Virus record (IMG/VR): IMGVR_UViG_3300047510_001118
Location: 124,001-188,000 of that record
Length of the DNA stretch: 64,000 bases
Strand: one strand, 5' to 3'
Shown here one piece after another: positions 45,205-64,000 of the stretch (positions within the stretch are counted from its first letter, which is position 1; every line of letters begins with the position of its first letter). Below the pieces are notes generated by a model. It was not told the origin of the DNA. It saw only the letters and a program-made list of their open reading frames with translations, and ran no database searches. The position numbers and the translations under genes were made by a program.

Positions 45205-45439
45205 CCTGTGTTTCCTCGAACGTCTCAAGTGCTAGAGTAAGACCCATGAGAACACCTTCCATCTTTAAAACATCGACAGATAAATCTTGTCGACGAGTAA
45301 AATCAATAGAAGTAATTCCATATGGATTTAATTTAATGTTAGCAAAATCTTCTTCCATTTTTGATAATTCTTGTTGTGCTTTTTCTTTTTCAGAAGTTAG
45401 ATTAGCCATCGTCTGTTGAATTTTTTCTTTGAAACTCAT
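45191..45439 (-). CDS. Small coiled-coil hypothetical protein (82 aa)
   Basis: Heptad-like helix, AAGGA SD, inside the operon. Confidence 0.8.
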   Translation of the reverse strand: MSFKEKIQQTMANLTSEKEKAQQELSKMEEDFANIKLNPYGITSIDFTRRQDLSVDVLKMEGVLMGLTLALETFEETQGVTS

Positions 45440-49310: not shown

Positions 49311-49322
49311 GCTACTATCCTA

Positions 49323-50183
49323 TTAGAAAAATTCTGTAATTACTACGATTCCAGGACGACCATCAGAACCTCGATGTCCATGGAAATATCCGGCAGTTCC
49401 GCCAGTGCCAGGAGCACTGTGTCCTTGGTGGTTATGACTAAAGTGGCCACCTTGCGGGTGACCTGCTGGTGCTGGGCCTCCCCAAAAACTGGCTCCTCCC
49501 ATTCCCGATGAACGCTGTTCGTGGCCACCGCCTGAACCAGTATGTATGTTAAAATCGCCGCCGCTGCCAACTCCACTTAGACCACCGTTGTGGTTGTTAT
49601 GTCTATTGGCGCCGTGGCCTCCACCTGCTGACACATATGGACCAAATGAACTACCGTTGCCGTTACCTCCGGCATTGTTATAGTATGTTCCGCTACCGCC
49701 ACCACCTACAGTAATACCAACGTTATTGATACTATCGACATTTAACAGTCTTTCAGCATAGCCACCTGCAGCGCCACTTTCACCGTGACCGCTGGCTCCG
49801 CCAGCACCGGCCTGTACTTGGATCCAGATATATCGTACTCTGCTATCTCCCTTACTCCAAGTTCCGTTTCCGGTAAAAACTACCATTCTATAAATGCCTG
49901 TTGGGCGGAATTCAATACTATTATTTGATGAATTAGTAGCAAGTAGATTATATGCGCCACCGGTGCTTGTACTACCTGTTCCGCCTTTGCTAAAAGGTGT
50001 AGTTCCGCTGACTACACTAGAACCAAAGTCTACTGAACCAGAACCTAATTGGGTTGCTGTAATAGTATTAGGGGCTAGTTCTGCGTTGGCTACAGCATCA
50101 GTGGCAAAGTCCGATCCAACTAGAGTTGAATTAACTAAAGCACTGTTTGATAGTTGTTTTAATGATTCATAATCAAATGGCAT
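49323..50183 (-). CDS. Short fibre protein with Gly/His-rich C-terminal domain (paralogue B)
   Basis: Same architecture as paralogue A. Confidence 0.8.
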   Translation of the reverse strand: MPFDYESLKQLSNSALVNSTLVGSDFATDAVANAELAPNTITATQLGSGSVDFGSSVVSGTTPFSKGGTGSTSTGGAYNLLATNSSNNSIEFRPTGIYRMVVFTGNGTWSKGDSRVRYIWIQVQAGAGGASGHGESGAAGGYAERLLNVDSINNVGITVGGGGSGTYYNNAGGNGNGSSFGPYVSAGGGHGANRHNNHNGGLSGVGSGGDFNIHTGSGGGHEQRSSGMGGASFWGGPAPAGHPQGGHFSHNHQGHSAPGTGGTAGYFHGHRGSDGRPGIVVITEFF

Positions 50184-50193
50184 ACTTTATCTC

Positions 50194-51045
50194 TTAATAA
50201 TAATTTGTTACTACAACAATACCCGGGCGGCCATCTGAACCTCTATGCCCGTGAAAATGTGCTCCAGCACCGCCGGTTCCTGGCGCACTGTGTCCTTGGT
50301 GGTTATGGGCAAAATGGCCGCCCTGTGGGTGGCTACTAACTGCTCCGCCGCCAAAATATGTATCTGCTGTACTTTGAGCACTATAAGCATGATGGCTAAA
50401 ACCTCCGCCCATGTGTAAGTTTAGGTTTCCTCCGGATCCCACGCCGCTAACTCCACCTGAGTGCTGGTTTTGTCTATTAGCACCGTGGCCTCCGCCTGCG
50501 GAAATGTAAGGCCCAAAACTAGTACCTCCTCCGTTACCGCCAGCATTGGCGTAATAAGTTCCGCTACCTCCGCCGCTGATAGTAATACCCACTGAACCGA
50601 TACCGGTAACATCAAGAAAACGTTCAGCATAGCCGCCGGCTCCGCCGCCTTCACCGTGTCCTGAGCCGCCGCCGGCGCCACCTTGTACTTGTACTCTTAT
50701 GTATTTTACACCTGCTGGTCTATTCCAGGTGCCACTACCAGTCCAAACTTGAATACTAGCAACTCCGTGTTGTTCCCAACTTAGACTTGAACCGTTACTT
50801 TGAAGAGCCCTATAACCACCACCAAAACTGGTAATTCCAAGACCACCTCGACCGATAGGTAACGTACCTGTGGTTGTACCTGATCCAACATCTACTGCTC
50901 CGGACGCTAACTTGGCTGCTGTTACGTTTCCGTTTACTATGTTACCGCCAGTGATAGTACCGTCTTGTATGTCACTGGCTGTAAGAGCTCCGTTAACAAC
51001 AGCATCACTTGTGATGTTTTTAAGCGTTTGATAATCAAATGGCAT
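50194..51045 (-). CDS. Short fibre protein with Gly/His-rich C-terminal domain (paralogue C)
   Basis: Same architecture as paralogue A. Confidence 0.8.
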   Translation of the reverse strand: MPFDYQTLKNITSDAVVNGALTASDIQDGTITGGNIVNGNVTAAKLASGAVDVGSGTTTGTLPIGRGGLGITSFGGGYRALQSNGSSLSWEQHGVASIQVWTGSGTWNRPAGVKYIRVQVQGGAGGGSGHGEGGGAGGYAERFLDVTGIGSVGITISGGGSGTYYANAGGNGGGTSFGPYISAGGGHGANRQNQHSGGVSGVGSGGNLNLHMGGGFSHHAYSAQSTADTYFGGGAVSSHPQGGHFAHNHQGHSAPGTGGAGAHFHGHRGSDGRPGIVVVTNYY

Positions 51046-51063
51046 ACTAGATATAACCCTCTA

Positions 51064-51891
51064 TTAAATACCAGATTCTAATAACCAACCGTATGATGAG
51101 TTGGAATAGACTAAACTAAATGCAGCACCAGCAGTTGTAACTGTCATAGTATCTAACTGACGCATGATACGCTGACCGTTGTTACCGACTGTTAATGCTC
51201 TAACGTTAAATGTTCCTGCTAGGTCGATAAACCAAACTTGATCTCCTGTTGCTGGACTTGCTGGCAATGTTAAAGTAATCGCTGTTGAGCTAGTATCAGC
51301 AAAAACTCGATCGCCTGCGGCCAGTGTTACAGAACTGTTTCTAGTAACCCACGGTTTACCGTAGGTTCTTTCTGTAAAAATCTTTGTCATCAAATGGTAA
51401 TCTGCTGACGGAGTAAATGATGAGCTGGCTGTTACAGTTGAACCGTTAAATGTAGCGGTGCCTGATACTGTTAAACTTCCACCCAAATTAGATGCGCCAG
51501 TACCTACAGTAAATGTTGATGATCCTGTTACTGATGTATTGCCGCTAAATGCAGCAGTAGTAGCAGTTAAAGGACCACCAGTGTTAACATAGGCTATGTA
51601 ATCAGTACCATTGGATGCTAGACTCACTGCCGCACCGGCTACTAAACTCCAGTTAGCACTGGCTGTTACGGCGGGATTTCTAATCACTCCTGCTGGAGTG
51701 TTTAATGTGACAGTGCCGCTGGTTGAATTATAAAATGTCTGGTGCGCACCAGCAAACAACGCCGGGGTCGGTAATGTCACAGTATAAGGCGCCGTACCGG
51801 TAAGTGTCGTAAATAGACCCTGATCTGGTGTTGTATATGTAATTGATCCGGATGTCGTCGTTACCGGAAACGAGGTATTATATCGTGCCAT
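51064..51891 (-). CDS. Tail-fibre-related protein
   Basis: Two T-x-TLP modules; DTS..A.T.TLPASP..GD.V..ID..GTF fibre repeat. Confidence 0.7.
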   Translation of the reverse strand: MARYNTSFPVTTTSGSITYTTPDQGLFTTLTGTAPYTVTLPTPALFAGAHQTFYNSTSGTVTLNTPAGVIRNPAVTASANWSLVAGAAVSLASNGTDYIAYVNTGGPLTATTAAFSGNTSVTGSSTFTVGTGASNLGGSLTVSGTATFNGSTVTASSSFTPSADYHLMTKIFTERTYGKPWVTRNSSVTLAAGDRVFADTSSTAITLTLPASPATGDQVWFIDLAGTFNVRALTVGNNGQRIMRQLDTMTVTTAGAAFSLVYSNSSYGWLLESGI

Positions 51892-52241: not shown

Positions 52242-55200
52242 TTATCTTTGCATAAAGAATCCAAGTGCAACGGGAGCCCCGTCGATGCCACCTGTGAAAT
52301 TCATCTTACTTGTAACATTAAGTGCTACACCCGTTGTAGTACTAATGCTATTACCTGCTATATATACCACACCCGCGGTCAATGTATTTACGTTTAATGA
52401 GCTCTGACCACCGCCAATTTGTGCAGTGATATATGCTTTAATTGCTCGCTGTGTAGGTACCACGTTATCGCTATCCGCTGTAAAGAACGGATCTGTGCTG
52501 AACTGTGTAATGATTGCTGATCCAATACCTAGTTCCACAGAACCCAACTGCAGACTGTTCAAACCGCTTAGGTTAAACGCCGAAGCGTTCAATGTAGCAG
52601 TACCAGTTGCTTGTTGGACTCCGAACAAGTCGCCAACGTTAAAGTTACCGTCTTGGTCAGTGGCTGTAAAGAATACTCGTCCGCCGCCGCTAAACAGTTC
52701 TTGATTAGCCTGACTTGCTGTGCTAATATCCACATTTGGATAGTTAGTTTGGTTGAAGTTACCTGTACCGATGTACAAGTAATCGTGACCAGTTAATCGA
52801 ACCTGACTGTACTTAATTCTTGTGGTAATTAAATCGCCGTGTCCTGGTGCTTGTAACACAGTTAAACCTGGGTTAATTTGGAAGGTTGCTGTGTAATTTC
52901 CTAGATCACCCAGTACGTTATTTACAGTAACTAGTTTGAAATACAATCCTGGTAAACTTGCGAACTCGACGTTAGCACCCGCTGTTGGAATATCGTACAA
53001 GCCGTTTACTGAAATAAATGTGCTTGGTTGATATAGGTTAGCGTAGCCGTCACCTAGTGTTTCTGCCTGTGCTGTTGAGTTATCAGCACCTCGATTTGAG
53101 AAGCTCGGATTACCTAGAGCCCCGTCACCTAGACGAACTCTAAATGTAGCCGGTAACACCTTGTTAGGATCAGTTACTGAGAACACAGGACCTGCTCTGT
53201 ATGTCATACCAGATATAGTAGCGTCAGTTAGTTGAACTGGTGTTGTTGATCCAGCAGTAGTACTGATTTTGAAACTCGATGCTGTGATAGTTGAGCCAAT
53301 TACATAATATGTGTTTTCTTCAACTAGTCCGCCTGCTGTTGTTCCAAAGAATTCAACCGGCATGCTGTCAACTAAGTTAATAGTGTTGCTGACATTAATC
53401 ACGTCTGTTGATGCTACAGTTGAAGAAACTGTTCCTTTTGGATATCCTGAACCAGGTTCGATCATACGAACTTCTGCTACTATGCCTGATGCCACTCTCA
53501 CGCGACCCAGTGCTTGAGCTCCGGTTCTAACTGTATTTGCTATAGTTCCCGATGCGGCTGATATCAGAGCAAATATTCCAGTATTGCTTGGATTACCAAA
53601 TGCTCCGCTGATCCAACTTGAGCTAACTGTTAACGTTCTTGCTGTCCAGTTTAGACCATCTGGACTTGTAGCACAGGCTGTTGTACCAGAGGCTGTGGCT
53701 ATAAACATACCTTGTCCATAGGTTACACTAGTCCATGAAGTACTAGTTGGCAATCCTGCTGGACTTGCTACCCAAGTCTGTCCTCTATCGATACTTACTG
53801 CAGCATTTCTTCCGCCGCTGGCCACTGCTACAAATCTACCATTACCGTAGGCTAATCCTGACCAAGTAGTGTTTGCTGGCAGAGTTCCGCCTGCTGTCCA
53901 ACTTGTACCGTTGGTAGAATATGCTGTTTGATTATTGCCTGTGGATATAGCAACGAATGCCTTGGCTCCATATGCTACTGCTGAATATGTTCCTGCTCCG
54001 AGACTTGGAATAGTTCTTGTTGTGAAACTTGTACCGCTAGTACTTGATGCCGCACTTGATGCGCCACCAACAGCAACATAAATGTTATTGCCGTAAGCAA
54101 GGCTTACTAAATTGCTGGCCGGTAAAGCAGTACCTGCTGTCCACGCAGATATTGTTGAAATGCCTGTTCTAGTAGTATATGCTATATCAGTACTGCCTGT
54201 GGCTATAGCCACATATTTGGCTGTTGAATCTAATATAGTTACTGTTGGTGTTGTAGTATATCCTGCTCCTGTATTTGTAACAGCAATACTTACTACTCCG
54301 TCTGTTGTGCCTGTTGCTGAAACTCTTGAAGGAGTTAAAATCGCTGTAGTACCAATATACAATAATGAAGCAGTGCCGTTACTTACAGTACCTGACTGAT
54401 GTACTGGCCCGCCAACACCTGTTGTTCCTGCTAATGTTACACGATACCAATTTTTAATGTTAGGTGTAACTGTGGTGTTTGTATGATACAGAATAGAATC
54501 TAAACTAACTGATGTGCTGGAAGCCCACACTGATCCTGTAAATGGATCACCAATTGAAACATCTGGATTACTGTTGTATCCTCGACCCCAACTTTCCACT
54601 GTTACTTGTGTTATTCGATCTGTGGCCGCAGAAACAGTCGGTGCTACGTTATAGCCAGATCCAGGAATAGTCACTGTTACATCTGTAATTCTGCCATCTA
54701 ATACGGCACAGGTAGCAGTGGCGCCCGTTCCTCCACTTACTGCGGTAAACACAATAACTGGCGGTGTGTCATAACCTTGGCCGCCGTCTAGAATTTCAAC
54801 TCTAGCAACTTGATCTGCTGTGGCTGCGCCTGTGGTATTTGCTTCGCCTAAGATAGCCCTAAACTGTGCGCCACGACCGCTTAATCCGCCAACTACGGCA
54901 GTGGCAACTGCTCCTTCTCCACCGGCATATACTACACTAGACCAGTTTGCGCTGGAAGGTAATACACCTGCGTTGGCCCAGGTCACACCGTCTGGGGAAT
55001 AACTTGTTGAAGTACTGTTATTAGCAATAGCAACAAATTTATTATCACCGTAGCAGACATCTTTCCATGTTGTTGTTGAAGAAAGTGTTCTAGCAGTAGC
55101 ATTAAATCCTGGAGCACTGTAAGAAACTCTTGGTTCAATGATATACGCTGTTGTTAAATCTAGAGCGGCTTCTATTGGTGTTCCTGGAACAGCATGATCC

Positions 55201-58200
55201 CAGCCAGCGGCTAAGATCGTCATAGATCCTGATGCTGTTGATAATGTTACTGCTCCGCCTCCTGGAGTTGTACTCACAGTAAATTGTGTAGCAGTTAATC
55301 CTGCGCTTCTTACATAGTAAGGAATATTAGCAGTAATTCCGCCGAATGCTGTGCCTGTAAAGTATATAGGCATGTTAGCATATAGACTTGCTGTGCTAGC
55401 CACAGTAATAAGATTACTAGTTACTGTAGTATTAGTAGCAGTTAACGAAGTAAATGAATCTTTATACACCTGTGCTACTTTACTACCATTTAAGAAAGTT
55501 AAGATATTAGCATATTGACCTACACCAGTACCAGCAGTAATTTGTATTCTCATGCCGTTATAAGCATTAGTTAATGCTGTATCTGTGGCTGCGATTGTAA
55601 TTTCAATGTCAGTACCGCTTTGTGCAGCGTTTTGTGCGCTGGCATAGTTGGTGCCGCCAGACCCATTACCGTCATCTGGGTCAATAATTCTTGTTTCAAA
55701 TACTGCCCCGTCTCGATATTCGTCTGCTAGAGCCTCGATATTATAACCACTACCGCTTACTGTGTGAACTGTGTTGGAATAATCTGAGCCAGCATTACCA
55801 AATTCTAAACGTAGAACTTCCATAGTGCCGTCTGTTACTACGTTAGTGATCTGTGCTTGAGCGGCTTTATTATCTACTCTAGCATATAGCGGTGTTTCTT
55901 TACTAGATACACCTTCAGCAATAACACCATATGTACCATATGAGCTGTTACCGTTGGTAGCACGGATACGTCCGCCTTTTTCTGCTAGGTATCCAGCGTA
56001 TCCATAGTAGTTAAACACAGATACAAGTTCTGTTAATGAGTCACTACCAGTACACCATACACCTAGACCGTCTGACATAATAGTAGTAAAGTCGTTCTTA
56101 ACCATAGACTTGTTACCGCCATTGTGTAAACTTGAATCGATCTTAGCACCAGAACAGCCTGTTCCGAACATTGTTACGTTCTGGCTATAGTGAGATCTTG
56201 TTAAGATCCATACAGATTCGTCGTTTGGACCAAACCCTGGGTCAAGGGCAACATAGGCGCCAGCAGTTGGTCGTTTAGTTCCGAAATCATTTAGTGCGCT
56301 CAAGTCACCGTTTAAACCAATTAATGTACAATTTCTTAGGCCGCAGGCATTTCTTGTACGGAACATATCTGCGTATTCAGAACCTTTAACTGCGTTTAGA
56401 TACAACTGTGCCGAACGTGTTGTCTTATAGTTGCCTGGCCAACGTAAATCGTAGACTAAGGCATCCATATATTCACGCATATCTCTCTTACATGAAGTAG
56501 GATCGTAAGCATATACCACAGTCATTGAGCCTGTGCTGGTAGTTAAACTTACATCATTGCCGCCTTTGGTTAGGCTAATTGTGAATTCAGTAGCACTTGG
56601 TACTGAAGTTACGTAGTAAGTTTCTGTATTAGATACACCACCGAAAACATTAGTAAATCTTACAGGATCGTTAACTGAAAGATTATGTGCCAATGCTGTT
56701 TCTAAAATATTGGAAGGACTTGTAGTGTCTGTGACTTCTCCGCCGTATGTAGCCGCAATGTATGCGCTGGCTTCTTCTGCTAAGAAATCTAAGTTTGCTT
56801 TAATAACTAAAGAAGAATTAATCAATCCAGAATCGTTAGCATAAGACATAGTGCCGTGTATTTCTGGTTGTTCACCTACACCAAACTCTAGGATATCAAT
56901 AATAATATCCATACCATTTTTTGCTGATGTAGAAGCATCGTCGCTACTTGATATTGTATTAACTATTCTTCTACGTAATTCTCTAAATGTCTGTAGAGTA
57001 GCACGTTTTTGTTCACCAATAACTTTGCTGGCCTGTGCTTGATAGTAGGCCATACCTGCTTTTACAGCACGGAAGTTACTGCCCATGAGCATGTCATAGG
57101 TTACAGCATCAATAACGTAACCCATGTCGCGTTGACATGTAACTGAATCGTAGACTAAGTTAGGATAATTTTCACCGATCCAATCTGACACTAGGCTGAT
57201 AATTGTTGCTCGAGCAGACTGCAGTGTTGTAGCCTGAGTTAGCATATCGGCACTTACCCAAGAAATATCTGGTAAATTAGTTGTTTCTGCCAGTATTGTT
57301 AGCCCAGTTCCACTAGTGAAAGATGTTATCGCAGTACCGTTCCAAGTAGCAGATAATGTAAATTGTGTACCAGATGGAATAGTTTTAACATAATATGTTA
57401 CCCCAGAATCTAAACCGTTAGCACTGGCCTGTGGACGAATTTCGTCACCAATATCCAAACCGTGAGCCGATGCTGTGGTAAATGTTGTTCCGCCAACAAT
57501 GTCAGTAATTGTTACTCTTGGCACACCTGTTGTAAGCCCTTGGTCGATAATATTTGTAATAATATCAACTAAACTACCTACAAGTGTTGAGGATGTAGCA
57601 TCACCGGTTGTACCTGTAATTCTTGTAACGGTACCTTGCAGTGTTGAATATACTCCGCCGCTGGCAATTGCTTGTAATACGGTCTTTAATTGTGCGTAAG
57701 CGTTTAAAGTTGCTGTCTTATCTGCCGAGTCAATCTGTAAAGCATTTGTTAATCTTGAATAGTAAGCAACACCTGCTTGTTTGCTGGCAAAACTACCACC
57801 ATATGTTAGGTCGTAACGTACAGCATCAACAATATACTCGACATCTCGCATACATTTTTCTTCACTGTACACAATTGAAGGGTAATTGTCGTCAATAAAT
57901 TGTTGTACTTCTGCGGCAATAAATTTTTTGTTTTGAGTGATTAATTTTGCTGCCGCATGATTTTCAACATCATAACCAGTAAATGTTGGCCACTGGAATC
58001 GAGGCTGTTTACCATTTCTGATGTAACTAACGATAGTTTCAATACCTAGTTGTGCCTTAGCACTACCGCCACCTACCGCCAGTCCTCGAATTTTATATTT
58101 TAAGAATTTAACTAGACCTAAACTGGCTTTCTTTTGGCTTGCTAAAACTGTTAGAGCAGATTCTAAATTTCTATAATAGCTCTTACCAGCGATTATTGAA

Positions 58201-61200
58201 GCAAAGTTACTGCCAAATGCCATGTCGTAGGCAATAGCATCTACCATATAGCCAATATCTCTAGAACATGTATCCTCGTTAAATGATAGGTCTTGGAAGA
58301 ACTTATTAACCCATGCTAGACCATCTAATTGTATTTCAGATTTGCGAGATTGAATAGCCGCAAATCCTGCTTCTAAATCATCGTCTACCCATGTTAGGCT
58401 AGGAGCGAGTGTTGTTGGACTTTCACCGTCTTCGATCCAGTCGATAACATCCTGTACTCGATCTTGAGCAAACGTGGCTGCGCCGATTGATCCCCCTGTA
58501 CCGCTTAGGGATTGTGGCGTTACGTTTCCTGCCTGTGGAGTTACAGATAATCTTCTTGCTACCTCGTCAATAATACTCTTCATGTGAGTATATGCAGCCA
58601 CAGTAGCAACTTCTGTGTCTTCTGGGATGACTAGATTAATATAGGTATAGTAACTACGACCTGCAATCAATGTCTGAGTGTTACCGCCATAGGTCAAATC
58701 GTAACGAATTGCATCTAAGATATATTCAATATCGCGTTGACATTTTGCTTGCCCTGTTGCTCCTAGAGCGGTCCAAACTGCTGGATATGTGTTTTGTATA
58801 TAACGGCTTACATCTGCTTTAATGAAGGCATAGTTGTTAGCAATCTGTATTCTTGCGTTCTGATAGTCAACATCAAATCCGACAGGATCTGGCATTATTT
58901 CTACAGGAGCCGCTGTTACGCCGTCTGCTAATATATCATAGATAGTATTAGCCGCAGTTTCTACTCGCTCTGCGGCCGCATATTCTCCAACCGTTCCAAA
59001 TATATCAACGTTACTTCCGTCAAGTTTACCGACAATAGCAACAGGATCTAAAGGATTGCCAGGAGTCTTAACAATCGATAATGGAGAAGTTAAAAGATCT
59101 GGAATAATATCTTTAACTCTTCTTAGTGATGCTACAGTTTTTTCTGTATCGTTGGCCAACAATTCTATAGCAGGCTGTGGTCTAATCACAGTTGAACGTA
59201 GTTCGTCGCCAACTACCGCAGTATTCTTGGGAATAATCATCGGTAATACTTCAAAGTATGTTCCAGTTTTAACAGAAACAGTAGTATTAGATGTTACAGC
59301 AGCCTTAATAGCCAATTCTGACTGGGCAAGAAGACCGTTAATAACAATATCTAACAGGTCGCTAACTAGTGCCTTTGCCTGTGTTTCTGCGGTCAAATCA
59401 GTATCGATGATCTGTGCTACTTGATCTGCTACTAGAACACCGTTTTCTATCTGATAACTAGTTGTTGGCTCAACATTGTCTAGGACATCTTCTGCTATAG
59501 AAACTAGATATTCATATGCTGAAACAGTTTGTGTAATCTGTTCGGCAAAATTATCATTGATATAATTTCCGCCATCAGCATCGTAGTATGATCTTGCGGC
59601 CTTTGTAGACTCTTCGTTACCGCCATGGCCGATATCATAAATTAAAGCATCAACTAATAGGCCAACATCTCGCTCGCAGGTCGCTTCGTCATAGGATAAA
59701 GTACCAGTCATTGGGGCAGTTTGAGTCGTAAGAGTTCTTGTAATACCGCCCTGTGTGTTAGAGATCGTAAATTTTACCCCGTCTATAACTTGTTTAACGT
59801 AATATTTTGTTCCAGCAGTTACTCCACCGACTGTGCCGCTAAATTCAATTGGCATATTAGCAGATAGGTTGCCGGTGCTATTACATGTAAATTCGTTAGT
59901 TGCAGCAGAACTTGCTGAGATAGCAACTGTGTAAGTATATGTTACCCAGTTTGAAACCTCTTTCATTATAAATTGTTTATTTTTTCTTAGAAGATCGCAA
60001 GCGTCTCTGTTATGATATCCTTTTTCAATTTGATCTAAGGCATAACGCACACTAGCCCAAGGTTTGTCAAAACTTAAACCTTGTCCTGATTCTAAAGTAT
60101 CTGTTCCAGTAGGCCCAACATAAACTAAGTTATTAATAATACCGTAGTATTCCCATGCTGGAAATCCTTGATTTACACGTAAGATCTGGCCATCTGTTCC
60201 GATAGGCAGTCTTGCTGGACCGTTAGCACTGTAATAATATGTATCGCCCTCTGTGGTCAATACTAATGCTTCGCTACCAGCAGATAAAAGATTCCAAAAA
60301 TCACCGTCTGTGTCTTGGTCTGGACGATTTCCAGGAGGAGTAGCAGTTGATGTATGTGGTGCCAAGCAGACAAAACTACTGGCTCCCCAAAATACTACAT
60401 CACCTCTATGATATGTAACACCTGATGTCCATGTAGACCCATATCCTACATACGAAATATTACCAATTACATTTGACGCTTCGGTGCTTACCGTGATGAT
60501 AAGATCATTGGCCGGGCTAATACCGCCTAGATCTGTACCAAGAATTTTAATTTTATCGCCAACATCATAACCTGTACCACCGTCAGCCACTGTTACGATA
60601 TACGATGTTCCAACTCTTTCTACATCAAATTCTGCTCCGGTTCCGCCTCCTACTAGAGGAATTAAATTAGTTCCAGTTACAGCAAGATACTCAGCACTAG
60701 ATGTTCGCCATTTGAAGCCAGAATTTAGTTGACTCCAATACATAACTGCCGGTGGTTCTTCAGCAGTATTATCAGCGATTGCTACGAATGTGTAGGCTCC
60801 TGCTCTAACGACATCGCCCACTTTATAGTCTTCAGTGCTTAACCAGTCTCCGCGGAAATTAAATCCGGTTGTATAAAGATCCCAGTCATCTGAATTAGTT
60901 GTCGGTGTTTGACCAACGTTGTTTGTTTTAGCAATAAATGAATAACCACCATAGGTTACAATATCGCCCTCTTGATAAACTGTTGCTATATCCCACGAGT
61001 CTTCAAATTGTAAACCTTCAACAAACAATACAAATTTTACATTGTCAAAAGTTGAAGTTGATGTATGAGGAGTTACACAAATCCATGTGCTGGCTCCATA
61101 TTTTACTACATCGTTTAATTTATATCTAGTAGTTGCGGCCCAATCGCCTAGATATGTAACACCTTGATTAAAGATGTCCCATTTACCTTGATCTAATTCA

Positions 61201-61919
61201 AGCCCTAATTGACTTGGTCCTGTAACAGTTCCTGCTATGGTCTGTGGACCATATGTGCCTGCTAGAGCAAACTGAACTGATGTCGTAGTACAAGCGGTAA
61301 CTGTGAAAGTTCCGTTAAATTCTGTTGGTGTTACGTCAGCGATTGTGATTGATGCGCCAGGAGCATATGGAGCAACGACCTGTGCAGCAAATGTTATAGT
61401 GGCTGTTCCGCCAGTGGCCGAAGCGCCAGTTGTAGGTAGTTCAACTGTTGCGGCTGCTGAAGTATGATAGGCATTACATACATAGGTTGTTCCGCCGTAT
61501 CTTACAAAATCGTGTGAACGATATCTAGTATTAGCAGTCCACGTGCCGCGCCATAAAAATGACTCAGCAAATGTATCCCATTTATCGTCATCGTCTTCAA
61601 GACCTAATGCTAGTGTGGCCGCAGATGTATGTGCTTCTGTACAGAGATAAATCAAACCGCCGTATTTGACAAGATCGCCTACGTTGTAGTAGGTACTTAT
61701 TGCCCAGTCGCCTGTCCAGTTTGTTCCGCCTGATACCAGGTTCCATTTACTTGGAATTGCTGATCTGTCAGTTTCAAAAAGGGCTGCCGATGTATGGGGT
61801 ATTACGCAAATATATGTTTGACCTCCGACGCTTACTACGTCGTCTGGTACATAAGATGTGGTTGCGTCCCATTCGCCTTGCCACACAAATCTAATTCTAC
61901 CTAATTTAAATTCAGCCAT
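52242..61919 (-). CDS. Giant modular virion fibre/baseplate protein (3225 aa)
   Basis: Seven N-terminal aromatic CBM5/12-like repeats, a beta-helix-like segment interrupted by six helical CxRD repeats, Asp-box (S/T-x-D/N-G-x-T-W) propeller, conserved C-terminal TGHD domain. Confidence 0.85.
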   Translation of the reverse strand: MAEFKLGRIRFVWQGEWDATTSYVPDDVVSVGGQTYICVIPHTSAALFETDRSAIPSKWNLVSGGTNWTGDWAISTYYNVGDLVKYGGLIYLCTEAHTSAATLALGLEDDDDKWDTFAESFLWRGTWTANTRYRSHDFVRYGGTTYVCNAYHTSAAATVELPTTGASATGGTATITFAAQVVAPYAPGASITIADVTPTEFNGTFTVTACTTTSVQFALAGTYGPQTIAGTVTGPSQLGLELDQGKWDIFNQGVTYLGDWAATTRYKLNDVVKYGASTWICVTPHTSTSTFDNVKFVLFVEGLQFEDSWDIATVYQEGDIVTYGGYSFIAKTNNVGQTPTTNSDDWDLYTTGFNFRGDWLSTEDYKVGDVVRAGAYTFVAIADNTAEEPPAVMYWSQLNSGFKWRTSSAEYLAVTGTNLIPLVGGGTGAEFDVERVGTSYIVTVADGGTGYDVGDKIKILGTDLGGISPANDLIITVSTEASNVIGNISYVGYGSTWTSGVTYHRGDVVFWGASSFVCLAPHTSTATPPGNRPDQDTDGDFWNLLSAGSEALVLTTEGDTYYYSANGPARLPIGTDGQILRVNQGFPAWEYYGIINNLVYVGPTGTDTLESGQGLSFDKPWASVRYALDQIEKGYHNRDACDLLRKNKQFIMKEVSNWVTYTYTVAISASSAATNEFTCNSTGNLSANMPIEFSGTVGGVTAGTKYYVKQVIDGVKFTISNTQGGITRTLTTQTAPMTGTLSYDEATCERDVGLLVDALIYDIGHGGNEESTKAARSYYDADGGNYINDNFAEQITQTVSAYEYLVSIAEDVLDNVEPTTSYQIENGVLVADQVAQIIDTDLTAETQAKALVSDLLDIVINGLLAQSELAIKAAVTSNTTVSVKTGTYFEVLPMIIPKNTAVVGDELRSTVIRPQPAIELLANDTEKTVASLRRVKDIIPDLLTSPLSIVKTPGNPLDPVAIVGKLDGSNVDIFGTVGEYAAAERVETAANTIYDILADGVTAAPVEIMPDPVGFDVDYQNARIQIANNYAFIKADVSRYIQNTYPAVWTALGATGQAKCQRDIEYILDAIRYDLTYGGNTQTLIAGRSYYTYINLVIPEDTEVATVAAYTHMKSIIDEVARRLSVTPQAGNVTPQSLSGTGGSIGAATFAQDRVQDVIDWIEDGESPTTLAPSLTWVDDDLEAGFAAIQSRKSEIQLDGLAWVNKFFQDLSFNEDTCSRDIGYMVDAIAYDMAFGSNFASIIAGKSYYRNLESALTVLASQKKASLGLVKFLKYKIRGLAVGGGSAKAQLGIETIVSYIRNGKQPRFQWPTFTGYDVENHAAAKLITQNKKFIAAEVQQFIDDNYPSIVYSEEKCMRDVEYIVDAVRYDLTYGGSFASKQAGVAYYSRLTNALQIDSADKTATLNAYAQLKTVLQAIASGGVYSTLQGTVTRITGTTGDATSSTLVGSLVDIITNIIDQGLTTGVPRVTITDIVGGTTFTTASAHGLDIGDEIRPQASANGLDSGVTYYVKTIPSGTQFTLSATWNGTAITSFTSGTGLTILAETTNLPDISWVSADMLTQATTLQSARATIISLVSDWIGENYPNLVYDSVTCQRDMGYVIDAVTYDMLMGSNFRAVKAGMAYYQAQASKVIGEQKRATLQTFRELRRRIVNTISSSDDASTSAKNGMDIIIDILEFGVGEQPEIHGTMSYANDSGLINSSLVIKANLDFLAEEASAYIAATYGGEVTDTTSPSNILETALAHNLSVNDPVRFTNVFGGVSNTETYYVTSVPSATEFTISLTKGGNDVSLTTSTGSMTVVYAYDPTSCKRDMREYMDALVYDLRWPGNYKTTRSAQLYLNAVKGSEYADMFRTRNACGLRNCTLIGLNGDLSALNDFGTKRPTAGAYVALDPGFGPNDESVWILTRSHYSQNVTMFGTGCSGAKIDSSLHNGGNKSMVKNDFTTIMSDGLGVWCTGSDSLTELVSVFNYYGYAGYLAEKGGRIRATNGNSSYGTYGVIAEGVSSKETPLYARVDNKAAQAQITNVVTDGTMEVLRLEFGNAGSDYSNTVHTVSGSGYNIEALADEYRDGAVFETRIIDPDDGNGSGGTNYASAQNAAQSGTDIEITIAATDTALTNAYNGMRIQITAGTGVGQYANILTFLNGSKVAQVYKDSFTSLTATNTTVTSNLITVASTASLYANMPIYFTGTAFGGITANIPYYVRSAGLTATQFTVSTTPGGGAVTLSTASGSMTILAAGWDHAVPGTPIEAALDLTTAYIIEPRVSYSAPGFNATARTLSSTTTWKDVCYGDNKFVAIANNSTSTSYSPDGVTWANAGVLPSSANWSSVVYAGGEGAVATAVVGGLSGRGAQFRAILGEANTTGAATADQVARVEILDGGQGYDTPPVIVFTAVSGGTGATATCAVLDGRITDVTVTIPGSGYNVAPTVSAATDRITQVTVESWGRGYNSNPDVSIGDPFTGSVWASSTSVSLDSILYHTNTTVTPNIKNWYRVTLAGTTGVGGPVHQSGTVSNGTASLLYIGTTAILTPSRVSATGTTDGVVSIAVTNTGAGYTTTPTVTILDSTAKYVAIATGSTDIAYTTRTGISTISAWTAGTALPASNLVSLAYGNNIYVAVGGASSAASSTSGTSFTTRTIPSLGAGTYSAVAYGAKAFVAISTGNNQTAYSTNGTSWTAGGTLPANTTWSGLAYGNGRFVAVASGGRNAAVSIDRGQTWVASPAGLPTSTSWTSVTYGQGMFIATASGTTACATSPDGLNWTARTLTVSSSWISGAFGNPSNTGIFALISAASGTIANTVRTGAQALGRVRVASGIVAEVRMIEPGSGYPKGTVSSTVASTDVINVSNTINLVDSMPVEFFGTTAGGLVEENTYYVIGSTITASSFKISTTAGSTTPVQLTDATISGMTYRAGPVFSVTDPNKVLPATFRVRLGDGALGNPSFSNRGADNSTAQAETLGDGYANLYQPSTFISVNGLYDIPTAGANVEFASLPGLYFKLVTVNNVLGDLGNYTATFQINPGLTVLQAPGHGDLITTRIKYSQVRLTGHDYLYIGTGNFNQTNYPNVDISTASQANQELFSGGGRVFFTATDQDGNFNVGDLFGVQQATGTATLNASAFNLSGLNSLQLGSVELGIGSAIITQFSTDPFFTADSDNVVPTQRAIKAYITAQIGGGQSSLNVNTLTAGVVYIAGNSISTTTGVALNVTSKMNFTGGIDGAPVALGFFMQR

Positions 61920-61969: not shown

Positions 61970-64000
61970 TTATAGTGCTCCGGGCCTTACCCACTGATTT
62001 ACAAAGAACTGATAGGCCATGCCGTCTCCGTCCCAGCCAGCAAATTCACCTTGTACATTGACTGTATTTGGCATATTAACTACTGATCCCGGAATTCCCG
62101 CAGGAATAGTACTTTGAATCTTATCTGGTCCACCTACTAATACTGTACCAGCAATCAACTGTCCTGTGAATGTATTTGATCCACCTTGACTTAATCTGCT
62201 GGTTAAATAGGATTTAATAGCCTTTTGAGTTGGAATTAGTTCGTTGCTGTTAGCAATAAATGTTGAATCTGTACTAAATTGTCTAATAACAACAGATGCT
62301 TGTCCAACGGCAATACCACCTAAACTCAGTGTTTCTAATCCTGATAATCCAAACTGGCTAGCACTTAAGGTAACAATACCTGTAGCCTGTTCAACACCGA
62401 ACAAGTCGCCAACTTTAAAGTTACCGTCTTGGTCTGTACTTGTATAAAACACGCGACCAAAGTTTACCTCAACTGCTTGATCCTGAGGTGCTAGAACAGT
62501 TTCTTCTGGAACATCTGGATAATTTGTTTGTTCAAAATTACCGTAACCAATATATAGATAGTCGTGTCCTGTTAATCGAGCCTGACTATATTTTGTTCTA
62601 ATTAATACTGGAGTTTCGTGATCCGGAGTTTCAGAAGATCGAATTTCCGGACCTACGGTTATATTTGCCTGTATGTTAGGAGCAACGGTACCAAATACTG
62701 CTGTTGCTCCTGTAATTTTATAAATTTGATCATTACCTTGTATAACTAAGTTATCCCCGGGTCCTGGTAATCTAGTTAAATTCTTAACAGTTAATGTAAG
62801 GCCGGTTTGATATTTGTCAGCATAACCACCGCCTCGAATAGCCACTGCTGTTGATGTAGTATTATATCCCTGGCCTCGGTTTAAAAATGTTGGATTTCCT
62901 AGTGTACCGTTACTAATTCTTGGAATTATAGAAGCATTTACAGTCACGTTTGGATCTCTAATAGTTATAGTTGGGGCCGATGCGTAATTAGAACCAGGTT
63001 CCCAAACAGCCACACCTGTGATTCTATTAGATGTAACAGTGACTCTTCCTTTTGTTTTTGCTCCGGCTTTGATTAGTGTAGCATTGTTCTGCCCCGAGAC
63101 TGTTACAAATGCTCCGTCTTTAGACGGTTCAACCCAACCGAATGTCACTGCTCCGTATGGATCGCTAGTAACTGTTCTACGTTTCCAGTTAAATCCGTCT
63201 TCGCTGGTCCAGGCAATATCTGAATTAGCATTTAATACTAAAAATACTCCTTGACCGTAACAGATTTTAGTTCCGGTAATTTCATAGGCACTCTGTTGCC
63301 ATGTTTGGCCATCAGTGCTAAACGCTGGTTTTCCTACAGTGCTAGAAATAGCAACAAACACACCGTTACCGTAGGCTACATCAGACCAATCTTCTGACGC
63401 AGGTAATGTTGTTATTGACCAAGATGTTCCGTTAGTGCTTAATGCAGCCGACGTTCCGCCCGATGCTACCGCAACAAATTTACCTGCTCCATAGCATAAA
63501 CCAGTCCACGATGCCGAAGTCGTTAACCCTGTCCCCGTGACCCATGTATTACCAAAGTCTGTCGAATAGGCTGCTGTTGCGTTCACTGCTGGGATAGGAT
63601 TCATTGGATCATCGTTATTAGCAGGTATATAAGTTGCTATGGCAACAAATTTACTGTTTCCATAAACTACTTTATTCCAACCGGATTTAGTTGGTAGTGT
63701 CGTTCTTTTCCAGCCGTCGCCGTTTGATTTTGAGACTAATGCTGTAGACTGTGTAGCAGTTGCGCCACCGCTGTAGGCAATTATTACCCAATAACTGTTT
63801 CCGTAGGCAATTCCTGACCATTGATCTCCAACTGGTAATGTAATCGGTGTCCATGTTTCACCGTCAACTGATCGTCCGATCGTCTGTTGACCGTCTGGCA
63901 CTGCCATAAAGAACCCGTTACCATATTCGATATCTATCCACTCGCTGCCTGTGGCCAGTGCGTTTGTCTGAGAATCTTCTTGAGTAAATCCCGGTGCTAA
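61970..64000 (-). CDS. Second giant virion protein, 5' truncated; paralogue of 52242-61919
   Basis: Frame open to 64000 (no stop upstream of ATG 63907). Asp-box repeats and YSQ.RLTGHDYLYIG...TDQDGNF.VGDLFGV.QATG C-terminal domain. Confidence 0.88.
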   Translation of the reverse strand, partial: LAPGFTQEDSQTNALATGSEWIDIEYGNGFFMAVPDGQQTIGRSVDGETWTPITLPVGDQWSGIAYGNSYWVIIAYSGGATATQSTALVSKSNGDGWKRTTLPTKSGWNKVVYGNSKFVAIATYIPANNDDPMNPIPAVNATAAYSTDFGNTWVTGTGLTTSASWTGLCYGAGKFVAVASGGTSAALSTNGTSWSITTLPASEDWSDVAYGNGVFVAISSTVGKPAFSTDGQTWQQSAYEITGTKICYGQGVFLVLNANSDIAWTSEDGFNWKRRTVTSDPYGAVTFGWVEPSKDGAFVTVSGQNNATLIKAGAKTKGRVTVTSNRITGVAVWEPGSNYASAPTITIRDPNVTVNASIIPRISNGTLGNPTFLNRGQGYNTTSTAVAIRGGGYADKYQTGLTLTVKNLTRLPGPGDNLVIQGNDQIYKITGATAVFGTVAPNIQANITVGPEIRSSETPDHETPVLIRTKYSQARLTGHDYLYIGYGNFEQTNYPDVPEETVLAPQDQAVEVNFGRVFYTSTDQDGNFKVGDLFGVEQATGIVTLSASQFGLSGLETLSLGGIAVGQASVVIRQFSTDSTFIANSNELIPTQKAIKSYLTSRLSQGGSNTFTGQLIAGTVLVGGPDKIQSTIPAGIPGSVVNMPNTVNVQGEFAGWDGDGMAYQFFVNQWVRPGAL

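What the first reader, a model, noticed from the sequence alone, without database searches (positions are those of the whole stretch)
56380..60010. Six phycobiliprotein/globin-like repeats with intact bilin-attachment C-x-R-D in a giant virion protein
Seen: six helical repeats in the 3225-aa protein, with C-x-R-D codons at 59667-59678, 58731-58742, 58257-58268, 57843-57854, 57126-57137 and 56481-56492. They read TCERDVGLLVDALIYDIGHGGN, KCQRDIEYILDAIRYDLTYGGN, TCSRDIGYMVDAIAYDMAFGSN, KCMRDVEYIVDAVRYDLTYGGS, TCQRDMGYVIDAVTYDMLMGSN and SCKRDMREYMDALVYDLRWPGN. Each has an upstream helix (e.g. LITQNKKFIAAEVQQFIDDNYP). Repeats 1-5 also have two downstream helices (ATVAAYTHMKSIIDEVA; AKALVSDLLDIVINGL); repeat 6 runs into beta-helix sequence instead. 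Established (sequences recalled from memory): phycocyanin-alpha has K-C84-x-R-D87-I-G-Y-Y-L-R-M-V-T-Y-C-L-V-x-G-G, where Cys84 binds the bilin and Asp87 is its counter-ion. Allophycocyanin-beta ends in helices like TVQAIQAxKEV and GVYxDYICSGL. Some phages encode heme oxygenase, bilin reductases (PebS, PcyA, PcyX) and CpeT-like lyases, and a virus-encoded acceptor is not obvious. Inference: these are phycobiliprotein-fold domains lacking the X/Y dimer helices. In repeats 1 and 6 a beta-domain is inserted just before the Cys helix. They could be covalent bilin acceptors, giving a pigmented or light-responsive virion, or tetrapyrrole-binding decoys. The similarity is by eye only.
Basis: partly seen in the sequence, partly recalled or inferred. 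Interest (0 to 1): 0.92.

Follow-up and report, generated by a model that had tools for sequence, protein, structure and literature searches.

The report
Phycobiliprotein-like repeats in phage tail fibre
A giant tail-fibre protein of an uncultured jumbo phage carries six copies of a domain that folds like the pigment-carrying phycobiliproteins of cyanobacteria and keeps their pigment-attachment motif, which raises the untested possibility that these virus particles carry a light-absorbing pigment.

Summary
The 3225-aa ORF (52242-61919, minus strand) has six C-x-R-D motifs at the stated codons, against 0.04 expected by chance. They sit in six homologous helical repeats.

The fold inference is supported:
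- Pfam PF00502 (Phycobilisome) passes its cut-off on the whole protein.
- Repeat profiles hit almost only phycocyanin/allophycocyanin alpha chains in the PDB, with marginal E-values.
- A template-free AlphaFold model of repeat 5 matches smURFP, the ApcE bilin domain, allophycocyanin and phycocyanin (TM 0.6-0.77).
- The X/Y helices are absent.
- In repeat 1 a beta-barrel is inserted before the Cys helix.

The domain defines a family seen in phage and metagenome contigs, and otherwise only on seven MAG contigs. It has at least 1565 protein clusters with 5-37 copies per protein. Among 50,697 phage records it occurs only in cyanophage fibre and baseplate proteins. Across 2866 repeats Cys is 95%, Arg 95% and Asp 98% conserved, and the three are lost together.

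Bilin binding is untested. No haem oxygenase, bilin reductase or lyase gene lies in the window. The domain is present in S-PM2, P-HM1 and P-HM2, which need light to adsorb. It is absent from P-SSM2 and P-SSP7, which adsorb in the dark. I found no published description.

The parts
52242..61919 (-). Giant ORF, 3225 aa: tail-fibre-like structural protein that carries all the repeats
   Evidence: ORF list and translation. PHROG tail-fibre families phrog_9851 (E 1e-166), phrog_4527 and phrog_5342. More than 744 giant homologues.
60720..61919 (-). N-terminal region with six CBM_5_12-like (chitin-binding type) modules; the extent (about aa 1-400) is approximate
   Evidence: Pfam PF02839, E 1.7e-37, 6 stretches.
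59931..60011 (-). Repeat 1, N-terminal helix pair (aa 637-663), separated from the rest of repeat 1 by an insert
   Evidence: HMM hit aa 637-708 to model positions 3-71. Helices 7-15 and 17-31 in the AlphaFold model of aa 632-885.
59685..59930 (-). Beta-barrel mini-domain inserted into repeat 1 (aa 664-745)
   Evidence: Six strands between the helix pair and the Cys helix in the model, pLDDT 93.5. Foldseek matches the small beta-barrel of phage endosialidases K1F/NF/phi92 and the F1-ATPase crown domain. Thirteen homologues keep the split.
59277..59684 (-). Repeat 1, Cys helix and downstream helices (aa 746-881); C-x-R-D at 59667-59678
58383..58871 (-). Repeat 2 (aa 1017-1179); C-x-R-D at 58731-58742
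   Evidence: HMM envelope, score 167.6. Pfam PF00502, E 0.032, on the repeat alone.
57966..58382 (-). Repeat 3 (aa 1180-1318); C-x-R-D at 58257-58268
   Evidence: HMM envelope, score 120.3.
57495..57968 (-). Repeat 4 (aa 1318-1475); C-x-R-D at 57843-57854
   Evidence: HMM envelope, score 167.0. Pfam PF00502, E 0.0037.
57276..57482 (-). Second copy of the beta mini-domain, between repeats 4 and 5 (aa 1480-1548)
   Evidence: Shares the '...GG...YYV...F.[IL]S...' pattern with the inserts of R1 and R6 and with two further copies, at roughly aa 2165-2240 and 2835-2910.
56835..57251 (-). Repeat 5 (aa 1557-1695); C-x-R-D at 57126-57137; the most phycobiliprotein-like copy
   Evidence: Pfam PF00502, E 4.8e-4, model positions 30-154 of 155. 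Aligns with allophycocyanin alpha residues 36-150, with the two Cys in register. AlphaFold pLDDT 83, six helices. Foldseek top hits are phycobiliproteins.
56346..56786 (-). Repeat 6 (aa 1712-1858), split and truncated: helix pair (56685-56786), beta insert (56499-56684), then the Cys helix and one further helix (56346-56498); C-x-R-D at 56481-56492
   Evidence: HMM hit to positions 29-74 only. The insert is homologous to that of R1.
52419..52826 (-). C-terminal tail-fibre module (aa 3032-3167)
   Evidence: Best stretch of phrog_9851 'tail fiber protein'. The same module ends the neighbouring upstream giant ORF.

Best explanation
The six repeats are real, homologous domains of about 140-160 aa, all helical. 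They have the fold of phycobiliproteins (the bilin-binding branch of the globin fold), spanning helices A to H without the N-terminal X/Y hairpin. They are strung along a 3225-aa tail-fibre-type structural protein of an uncultured jumbo myovirus. They belong to a large family seen in phage and metagenome contigs. Among cultured phages this family is confined to the fibre and baseplate proteins of T4-like cyanophages. It most likely descends from a C-x-R-D-type bilin-binding globin resembling phycobiliprotein alpha subunits. The Cys, Arg and Asp of the chromophore site are the best-kept residues of the domain and decay together. I therefore infer that the ancestral pocket is still in use, and that each repeat most likely carries a linear tetrapyrrole joined to the Cys by a thioether bond, added in the infected cell before assembly. 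The bilin would serve at least as a folding or stabilising cofactor of the fibre shaft. Shown here: the repeats, the motif, the fold, the distribution and the conservation. Inferred: common descent with phycobiliproteins (my estimate about 0.75) and ligand binding (about 0.45). The stated confidence applies to the whole statement including bilin binding. The fold claim alone I put at about 0.9.
For: Sequence:
- Pfam PF00502 scores 27.6 bits against a cut-off of 22.2 on the whole protein. Single repeats reach E 4.8e-4 to 0.03.
- phmmer aligns R5 with allophycocyanin alpha over residues 36-150 with the Cys in register.
- Three repeat profiles (6, 24 and 118 rows) hit almost nothing in the PDB but alpha-phycobiliproteins: 43/43, 27/29 and 29/31 hits.
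- PF00502 is the only Pfam family hit by more than one of 72 single repeats.

Structure:
- The template-free AlphaFold model of R5 has pLDDT 83 and pTM 0.78.
- Its top 37 Foldseek PDB hits are all phycobiliprotein-fold chains (smURFP, ApcE bilin domain, allophycocyanin, phycocyanin, cryptophyte phycoerythrin beta), with TM 0.6-0.77 and rmsd 2.2-2.8 A; sensor globins come next.
- Predicted structures of cyanophage fibre proteins match the same model.

Conservation:
- Over 2866 unique repeats from 262 proteins at about 30% identity, C is 95%, R 95% and D 98% conserved.
- Of 122 repeats without the Cys, 65 also lost R and 37 lost D. Of 2570 repeats with the Cys, only 50 lost R.
- 49% of all cysteines in these giant proteins lie in C-x-R-D.

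Literature:
- CXRD is the recognised bilin-attachment motif of phycobiliproteins. It also occurs in BBAG-1/-3 globins, which attach bilins without lyases (PMC10151467).

Host link:
- 17/17, 50/50 and 350/350 matching records among 50,697 phage genomes are cyanophages.
Against: - No chromophore has been observed; everything about the ligand is inference.
- The sequence similarity to phycobiliproteins stays marginal (best E about 1e-3) and does not improve with a broader profile. Only 4 of 72 single repeats reach Pfam E<0.01.
- AlphaFold was trained on phycobiliproteins and may be drawn to that fold by the motif.
- The family has further near-invariant residues that phycobiliproteins lack (Asp at +14 99%, Tyr at +30 99%, Asn at +20 81%), so the pocket may have been rebuilt for another purpose.
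- No haem oxygenase, bilin reductase or CpcS/CpcT family was found in 50 ORFs of the window. No relative of P-SSM2 PebS or haem oxygenase occurs in 1.41 Mb of window plus homologue flanks.
- The core genes of this phage resemble jumbo phages of heterotrophs (terminase 56% identical to PA5oct), so its host, and hence its bilin supply, is unknown.
- Syn1 has the repeats but no cpeT. P-SSM2 has ho1 and pebS but no repeats. There is therefore no strict gene co-occurrence.
Confidence: 0.45

Rival explanations
1. Ligand-free structural module. A phycobiliprotein-type domain was captured by a phage and is now only a rigid helical bead in the fibre shaft. Cys, Arg and Asp are kept because they make intra- or inter-domain contacts (salt bridges, packing against the neighbouring chain of the trimer) together with the new invariant Asp+14, Asn+20 and Tyr+30.
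For: - The extra near-invariant polar residues absent from phycobiliproteins point to a family-specific network.
- Copy number varies from 5 to 37 per protein, as expected of a length-setting shaft module.
- No bilin genes were found nearby.
- No strict co-occurrence with cpeT, ho1 or pebS.
- No report of coloured cyanophage particles was found in the literature searches.
Against: - A buried structural role does not easily explain why exactly the three chromophore-site residues are retained at 95-98% at about 30% overall identity, nor why they are lost as a unit while Asp+14 and Tyr+30 stay.
- Cys is otherwise rare in these proteins (0.64%).
- From my own knowledge, not tested here: apo-phycobiliproteins are generally poorly stable.
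Confidence: 0.33
2. The pocket is used, but not for a bilin. The Cys serves another chemistry, for example a covalent cross-link that hardens the fibre, a metal site formed with the conserved aspartates, or a different host-derived ligand.
For: - Conserved acidic residues on the Cys face of the helix (Asp+3, Asp+14), with Asp+9 and Asn+20 nearby, are not typical of a bilin pocket.
- The gene sits beside an island of eight 2OG-Fe(II) oxygenase-type genes, JmjC and cupin genes and four Trp halogenase genes that could modify proteins.
Against: No precedent known to me for such chemistry on this fold. The motif match to phycobiliproteins extends beyond C, R and D to the following [IV]-G-Y and the later Y and G-G, which is most simply read as retention of the original site.
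Confidence: 0.12
3. No relationship. This is an unrelated helical repeat that converged on a short C-x-R-D...G-Y motif, and the fold match is an AlphaFold or Foldseek artefact for a six-helix bundle.
For: E-values to phycobiliproteins are marginal and do not grow with profile depth. Foldseek E-values are about 1e-3. The model of R1 with its insert gives only weak phycobiliprotein hits.
Against: - The specificity is extreme: alpha-phycobiliproteins make up 43/43, 27/29 and 29/31 of the PDB sequence hits of three different repeat profiles.
- The R5 alignment is colinear over about 115 residues, covering helices A to H.
- The whole-protein Pfam score exceeds the curated cut-off.
- Foldseek ranks 37 phycobiliprotein chains ahead of any other globin.
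- The cultured carriers all infect phycobiliprotein-bearing hosts or their Prochlorococcus relatives.
Confidence: 0.05

Closest known systems
Phycobiliprotein alpha subunits (CpcA, ApcA; Pfam PF00502)
   Same: - Globin-like helices A to H.
- The Cys-helix motif K/T-C-x-R-D-[IV]-G-Y ... Y ... G-G is in register with Cys84, Arg86 and Asp87.
- Foldseek TM 0.5-0.65.
   Different: - No X/Y helices, which in phycobiliproteins build the alpha-beta monomer (my own knowledge).
- Tandem copies within one giant chain instead of free 160-aa subunits.
- Encoded by phages in fibre or baseplate genes, not in phycobilisome operons.
- Extra invariant Asp+14, Asn+20 and Tyr+30.
- Sequence identity only 17-22%.
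- Chromophore not shown.
ApcE (core-membrane linker) bilin-binding domain and smURFP
   Same: These are the best Foldseek matches (4xxi, 4xxk, 6fzn, 7uqa; TM up to 0.77 on target length, rmsd 2.2-2.8 A). From my own knowledge, not tested here: ApcE carries a long loop inserted between helices B and E, the same place as the beta-barrel insert of repeats 1 and 6, and both ApcE and smURFP attach their bilin without a lyase.
   Different: ApcE uses a different Cys (my own knowledge). smURFP is an engineered allophycocyanin alpha. Neither is repeated in tandem or part of a virion.
BBAG-1/BBAG-3 (bilin biosynthesis-associated globins of non-photosynthetic bacteria)
   Same: Phycobiliprotein paralogues outside the phycobilisome with a CXRD motif, which bind several bilins without lyases (PMC10151467).
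   Different: BBAGs are single-domain cellular proteins defined by clustering with haem oxygenase and pre-PcyA genes. No such neighbours were found here. No sequence comparison with BBAGs could be run.
Giant fibre and baseplate proteins of T4-like cyanophages (S-PM2 p091 'T4-GC 830', S-RSM4 'short tail fibre', P-HM1/P-HM2 gp7)
   Same: They carry the same repeat: five C-x-R-D copies in S-PM2 p091 and two in P-HM2 gp7. 350 cyanophage records match. They are annotated as virion structural, tail-fibre or baseplate proteins.
   Different: Only 23-30% identical to the window's repeats. Those phages are 170-250 kb T4-like phages, whereas this one is a jumbo phage with a PA5oct-like terminase. I found no paper that describes the domain in them.

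Membership tests
Phycobiliprotein family (Pfam PF00502) | Sequence score above the curated Pfam gathering cut-off | tested here: met
   The whole protein scores 27.6 bits against a cut-off of 22.2, E 3.2e-6. This is borderline: the best single repeat scores 20.6 bits, and only 4 of 72 single repeats reach E<0.01.
Phycobiliprotein family (Pfam PF00502) | Globin-like fold with helices A, B, E, F, G and H | tested here: met
   The AlphaFold model of R5 has six helices, pLDDT 83. The top 37 Foldseek PDB hits are phycobiliprotein chains, TM 0.6-0.77. This is a prediction, not an experimental structure.
Phycobiliprotein family (Pfam PF00502) | N-terminal X and Y helices that mediate alpha-beta monomer formation | tested here: not met
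   Alignments start at allophycocyanin residue 36 / Pfam position 30. Repeats follow each other every 138-167 aa (interquartile range) with no room for the hairpin.
Phycobiliprotein family (Pfam PF00502) | C-x-R-D chromophore site at the position equivalent to Cys84 | tested here: met
   In register in HMMER alignments. C/R/D are 95/95/98% conserved over 2866 repeats.
Phycobiliprotein family (Pfam PF00502) | Covalently bound bilin | not testable with these tools
   Needs spectroscopy, Zn-blot or mass spectrometry on virions or recombinant protein.
Phycobiliprotein family (Pfam PF00502) | Free subunit of about 160-175 aa encoded with partner subunit, linkers and lyases in a phototroph | tested here: not met
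   The domain sits inside a 3225-aa phage protein between fibre genes. A pattern scan of 185,579 species genomes gave only 7 stretches on 6 MAG contigs, none cyanobacterial.
BBAG (bilin biosynthesis-associated globins) | Gene clustered with haem oxygenase and a ferredoxin-dependent bilin reductase | tested here: not met
   Neither Pfam family was found in 50 window ORFs. No PebS or HO relative was found in 1.41 Mb of flanks. The rest of the 278-381 kb genome was not seen.
BBAG (bilin biosynthesis-associated globins) | Lyase-independent bilin attachment through CXRD (BBAG-1/-3) | not testable with these tools
   The motif is present. Attachment needs co-expression experiments such as those in PMC10151467.
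Phage tail fibre / baseplate structural protein | Homology to known fibre modules and position in a tail gene block | tested here: met
   phrog_9851 tail fibre, E 1e-166, and other tail PHROGs. Neighbours hit tail-fibre and fibre-assembly PHROGs. Cyanophage homologues are annotated as virion structural, tail-fibre or gp7 proteins. Presence in the particle of this phage is not shown.

The most novel reading that the evidence does not exclude
The fibre and baseplate proteins of these phages carry covalently bound bilins and act as the virion's own photoreceptor, gating adsorption by light. This would explain the unexplained light-dependent adsorption of S-PM2, P-HM1 and P-HM2. [quoted passage not shown] It would also give phage-encoded haem oxygenase, PebS/PcyA/PcyX and CpeT-like genes a virus-encoded acceptor. 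In the five phages I could check, the domain is present in the three that need light to adsorb (S-PM2; P-HM2; P-HM1). It is absent from the whole genomes of the two that adsorb in the dark (P-SSM2; P-SSP7). These five represent only about two independent lineages on each side.
Probability: 0.12. Interest if true: 0.97.

Novelty: new variant of a known kind. Interest (0 to 1): 0.82.

Why it matters
Phycobiliprotein-type globins are known as light-harvesting subunits of phototrophs and, since 2023, as BBAGs of heterotrophic bacteria. A third lineage, repeated up to 37 times inside virion fibre proteins and with the chromophore motif kept, has not been described as far as my searches reach.

If the repeats bind bilin, three open questions become directly testable:
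- Why cyanophages of Prochlorococcus, which lacks phycobilisomes, carry working ho1, pebS and pcyA genes. The role of pebS and pcyA is called 'a mystery' in PMC3037559, which lists ho1 in the same genomes.
- Why phages thought to infect heterotrophs carry hemO-pcyX/pcyA cassettes (called 'enigmatic' in PMC11480375).
- What senses light in light-dependent cyanophage adsorption (PMC6628666).

S-PM2 and P-HM2 are cultured laboratory systems in which this can be tested at once.

Even if the domain carries no ligand, it is a clear case of a host antenna-type fold exapted as a building block of phage fibres. It is also a marker that, among cultured phages, is exclusive to cyanophages.

Tried and rejected
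1. Megablast of the region against 50,697 phage genomes gave no match. The phage is not a sequenced isolate.
I replaced it with a degenerate DNA pattern.
3. Sub-ranges of protein ids are not accepted. Repeat alignments were built from DNA references instead.
4. Broader repeat profiles did not sharpen the PDB hit (E 7.7e-4, then 8e-3, then 0.025).
5. Foldseek on the R1 model with its insert gave only weak phycobiliprotein hits, because the domain is discontinuous.
6. Co-occurrence with bilin genes:
   - No HO, FDBR or lyase Pfam family in the window.
   - No PebS or HO relatives in 1.41 Mb around 141 homologous loci.
   - PSSM2_057, first taken as a possible HO, is not one. The annotated HO is PSSM2_291.
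   - A strict link to the phage CpeT-like gene is rejected. Syn1 lacks cpeT (PMC3037559 Table 3) but has the repeats. P-SSM2 has ho1 and pebS but no repeats.
7. The rest of this phage's 278-381 kb genome could not be read. Walking 10 kb per call was judged too costly.
8. A period-2 (alpha/beta-like) alternation of repeat types is only weak (mean identity 0.33-0.34 at even lags against 0.31 at odd lags) and was not pursued.
9. Model coordinates are not exposed, so burial of the Cys and pocket volume could not be measured.
10. The paper by Jia et al. 2010 on S-PM2 adsorption is not held. It is cited through PMC6628666 and PMC5082946.

Full report
**1. Observation**

The window holds one very long ORF on the minus strand, 52242..61919, of 3225 aa. 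A search for C-x-R-D finds six sites, at residues 748, 1060, 1218, 1356, 1595 and 1810. From the protein's own composition 0.038 such motifs are expected, and none of 20000 shuffles had three or more.

The six sites lie in repeats that align with about 30% identity, with C, R, D, D, A, Y, D and Y invariant. A profile of the repeats finds R2 to R5 full length. R1 comes in two pieces (aa 637-708 and 709-880). R6 is a fragment that stops after the second helix behind the Cys.

**2. What the repeats are: sequence evidence**

Pfam reports two families for the whole protein. One is six CBM_5_12 modules at the N-terminus. The other is PF00502 'Phycobilisome protein', E 3.2e-6, 27.6 bits against a curated cut-off of 22.2. 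Taken singly, R5, R4 and R2 reach E 4.8e-4, 3.7e-3 and 0.032.

A phmmer search of the repeat region against all PDB sequences puts allophycocyanin alpha first (E 8.6e-4). R5 aligns with residues 36-150 of that chain, and the repeat's Cys is in register with the chromophore Cys in T-C-L-R-D-M-D-Y-Y.

Profiles made from 6, 24 and 118 repeats hit almost nothing in the PDB except alpha subunits of phycocyanin, allophycocyanin and phycoerythrin: 43 of 43, 27 of 29 and 29 of 31 hits. The best E-values are only 7.7e-4, 8e-3 and 0.025. Of 72 single repeats from many phages, four hit PF00502 at E<0.01, and no other family is hit more than once. The sequence signal is therefore very specific but marginal, and it does not grow with profile depth.

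**3. Structure evidence**

A template-free AlphaFold2 model of R5 (aa 1550-1705, 24-row alignment of repeats) has mean pLDDT 83 and pTM 0.78. It consists of six helices.

Foldseek against the PDB returns phycobiliprotein-fold chains in the first 37 places: smURFP, the bilin-binding domain of ApcE, allophycocyanin, phycocyanin and cryptophyte phycoerythrin beta. TM-scores are 0.6-0.77 and rmsd 2.2-2.8 A over 120-135 residues. The DosC sensor globin comes next.

A second model, of R1 with its insert (aa 632-885, 72-row alignment), has pLDDT 93.5 and pTM 0.89. It reads helix, helix, six strands, then the Cys helix and further helices. This confirms a beta domain inserted just before the Cys helix. 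Foldseek matches that insert to the small beta-barrel of phage endosialidases and to the F1-ATPase crown. Because the domain is discontinuous, the helical part gives only weak phycoerythrin hits.

The same mini-domain of about 70 aa recurs five times in the protein, including inside R6. Thirteen homologues keep the split R1.

I could not check whether the Cys faces a cavity.

**4. The family**

A word-indexed search found more than 744 giant homologues of 1.9-4.8 thousand aa. An exhaustive profile search of 1.84 billion cluster representatives found 1565 proteins at E<=1e-3 and 1185 at E<=1e-10. Lengths among the best 150 run from 830 to 6382 aa, with up to 37 repeats.

Over 2866 unique repeats from 262 proteins, the Cys is kept in 95%, the Arg in 95% and the Asp in 98%. 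Three further positions that phycobiliproteins lack are also nearly fixed: Asp at +14 (99%), Tyr at +30 (99%) and Asn at +20 (81%).

The three chromophore-site residues decay together. Of 122 repeats without the Cys, 65 have also lost the Arg and 37 the Asp. Only 50 of 2570 repeats with the Cys lack the Arg. Asp+14 and Tyr+30 mostly persist in the degenerate copies.

**5. Where the domain occurs**

A degenerate DNA pattern for the motif found only seven stretches, on six contigs, in one genome for each of 185,579 bacterial and archaeal species. All are on MAG contigs assigned to various heterotrophs, and none is in a cyanobacterium. All 141 loci then held, of which 127 came from these two pattern scans, contain HMM-confirmed repeats.

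In 50,697 deposited phage genomes, three different queries matched 17, 50 and 350 records. Every one is a Synechococcus or Prochlorococcus phage or a marine single-cell virus. The hits lie in proteins annotated as tail fibre, short tail fibre, virion structural protein or gp7 baseplate wedge.

S-PM2 p091, annotated as tail fibre, has five C-x-R-D repeats. P-HM2 gp7 has two.

**6. The phage in the window**

The window is positions 124001-188000 of a 278-kb IMG/VR contig. The same protein is also recorded on a 381-kb contig.

The large terminase is 56% identical to that of Pseudomonas jumbo phage PA5oct, followed by other jumbo phages of 290-470 kb. The core is therefore not T4-like-cyanophage.

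The accessory genes point the other way. The window has four tryptophan halogenase genes, eight 2OG-Fe(II) oxygenase-type genes, and JmjC and cupin genes. The halogenase's best relatives are in cyanophages (S-CREM1 64%, Syn9 55%; 54 of 65 matching records). prnA is listed among cyanophage-exclusive genes (PMC3037559). The host is unknown. A picocyanobacterium is possible but not shown.

**7. Bilin genes**

No haem oxygenase, ferredoxin-dependent bilin reductase, CpcT/CpeT or CpcS family appears among 50 ORFs of the window. P-SSM2 PebS and haem oxygenase find no relative in 1.41 Mb comprising the window and the flanks of 141 homologous loci.

Most of this phage's genome could not be read. Among T4-like cyanophages there is no strict co-occurrence. 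Syn1 has the repeats but no cpeT. P-SSM2 has ho1 and pebS but no repeat anywhere in its 252 kb. In cyanobacterial hosts the cell itself supplies bilins, so these negatives weigh little.

**8. How it most likely works**

Three things are shown:
- A phycobiliprotein-type fold is repeated along a fibre protein.
- The chromophore-site triad is conserved and lost as a unit.
- In cultured phages the domain occurs only in cyanophages.

From PMC10151467, CXRD is the bilin-attachment motif of phycobiliproteins. The related BBAG-1/-3 globins of non-photosynthetic bacteria use it to attach bilins without lyases.

My inference is that the phage domain descends from such a bilin-binding globin and still binds a linear tetrapyrrole at the Cys. 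The bilin would be loaded in the cytoplasm before fibre assembly and would serve at least as a stabilising cofactor. I give the fold 0.9, common descent about 0.75 and bilin binding about 0.45.

The main rival (0.33) is a ligand-free shaft module whose C/R/D have acquired structural roles within the new Asp/Asn/Tyr network. A smaller rival (0.12) is another chemistry at the Cys, such as a cross-link or a metal site. Pure convergence (0.05) is unlikely given the specificity of the hits.

**9. A lead worth testing**

Liu et al. 2019 (PMC6628666) report the following:
- P-HM1 and P-HM2 do not adsorb to their hosts in the dark.
- P-SSM2 and P-SSP7 do adsorb in the dark.
- S-PM2 adsorption is light-dependent and independent of host photosynthesis.

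The repeat is present in S-PM2, P-HM1 and P-HM2. It is absent from the complete genomes of P-SSM2 and P-SSP7, searched in six frames at maximum sensitivity with two profiles.

This is five phages and about two independent lineages on each side. It is a lead, not evidence. It does suggest a concrete candidate for the photoreceptor and a simple experiment.

**10. Comparison with what is known, and novelty**

The closest known proteins are alpha-type phycobiliproteins, the ApcE bilin domain, smURFP and BBAGs. The phage domain meets the fold and motif criteria and, narrowly, the Pfam score. It fails the X/Y-helix and genomic-context criteria. The defining property, a bound bilin, is untested.

I therefore do not file it as a phycobiliprotein. 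I file it as a new, virion-borne, tandem-repeat lineage of the bilin-binding-globin fold.

Full-text searches gave no paper describing it. The search terms were PF00502 with phage; phycobilisome protein with tail fibre and virion; CXRD with phage; globin-like with tail fibre and cyanophage; and phycobiliprotein-like with cyanophage. Automated Pfam annotation does flag PF00502 on about one in seven of the listed homologues.

**11. Verdict**

- The structural interpretation is supported.
- The functional interpretation is open but well motivated and readily testable in cultured cyanophages.
- Interest is high.

Noticed in passing
window 61970-64000 (minus strand); L001:171-6038: The ORF listed as 645 aa (61970..63907) is only the C-terminal part of a second giant fibre-like protein of at least 1955 aa that runs off the window. 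It ends in the same phrog_9851 tail-fibre module as the 3225-aa protein. Near its N-terminus it has one weak, degenerate repeat without C-x-R-D.
   Followed up: partly
window 59685-59930, 57276-57482, 56499-56684, and roughly aa 2165-2240 and 2835-2910 of the giant ORF: There are five copies of a beta-barrel mini-domain of about 70 aa (pattern ...GG...YYV...F.[IL]S...). Two are inserted inside phycobiliprotein-like repeats. The modelled copy resembles the small beta-barrel of phage endosialidases and the F1-ATPase crown domain.
   Followed up: partly
window about 27300-48400: An island of oxygenase and halogenase genes lies directly beside the fibre genes: four tryptophan halogenase genes, eight 2OG-Fe(II) oxygenase-type genes (most in a run of about 200-aa ORFs at 38241-45228), plus JmjC, cupin_8 and two DUF6445 genes. 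The halogenase's nearest relatives are cyanophage prnA genes (S-CREM1 64%). Whether these enzymes modify the fibre proteins is unknown.
   Followed up: partly
whole window; terminase at 8959-10554 (minus strand): The phage is a jumbo myovirus (contigs of 278 and 381 kb). Its large terminase is closest to Pseudomonas phage PA5oct (56%) and other 290-470 kb phages. Its accessory genes (prnA, 2OG oxygenases, the fibre repeat) are otherwise typical of T4-like cyanophages. It may be a new kind of large cyanophage, or a phage sharing their gene pool.
   Followed up: partly
window 48453-51891 (minus strand): Four consecutive paralogous-looking ORFs of 275-286 aa lie just downstream of the giant gene. 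The two that were scanned hit tail-fibre or fibre-assembly PHROGs (phrog_863, phrog_31104, phrog_972).
   Followed up: no
family-wide (262 proteins); window repeats R2-R5: There is a weak period-2 pattern. Repeats two or four places apart are slightly more alike (mean identity 0.33-0.34) than neighbours (0.31). In the window, R2/R4 read K-C-x-R-D-[IV]-E-Y and R3/R5 read T-C-x-R-D-[IM]-G-Y. This hints at a two-repeat super-unit.
   Followed up: partly
L148 (P-HM2 gp7), L021 (S-PM2 p091), L142-L147 (P-SSM2), L149 (P-SSP7): Presence of the repeat tracks published light-dependent adsorption in the five cyanophages checked. It is present in S-PM2, P-HM1 and P-HM2, and absent from P-SSM2 and P-SSP7.
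   Followed up: partly
L146:28709-29410 (P-SSM2): In P-SSM2 the haem oxygenase gene lies immediately upstream of a block of tail-fibre genes, separated only by an HNH endonuclease gene.
   Followed up: no
L014-L020 (genome contigs): The only 'cellular' occurrences of the motif are on contigs of MAGs assigned to Crocinitomicaceae, Yoonia, Chitinophagales, Acidimicrobiaceae, Rhodobacteraceae and a gammaproteobacterium. These are probably phage contigs binned with bacteria, but they could hint at non-cyanobacterial hosts.
   Followed up: no
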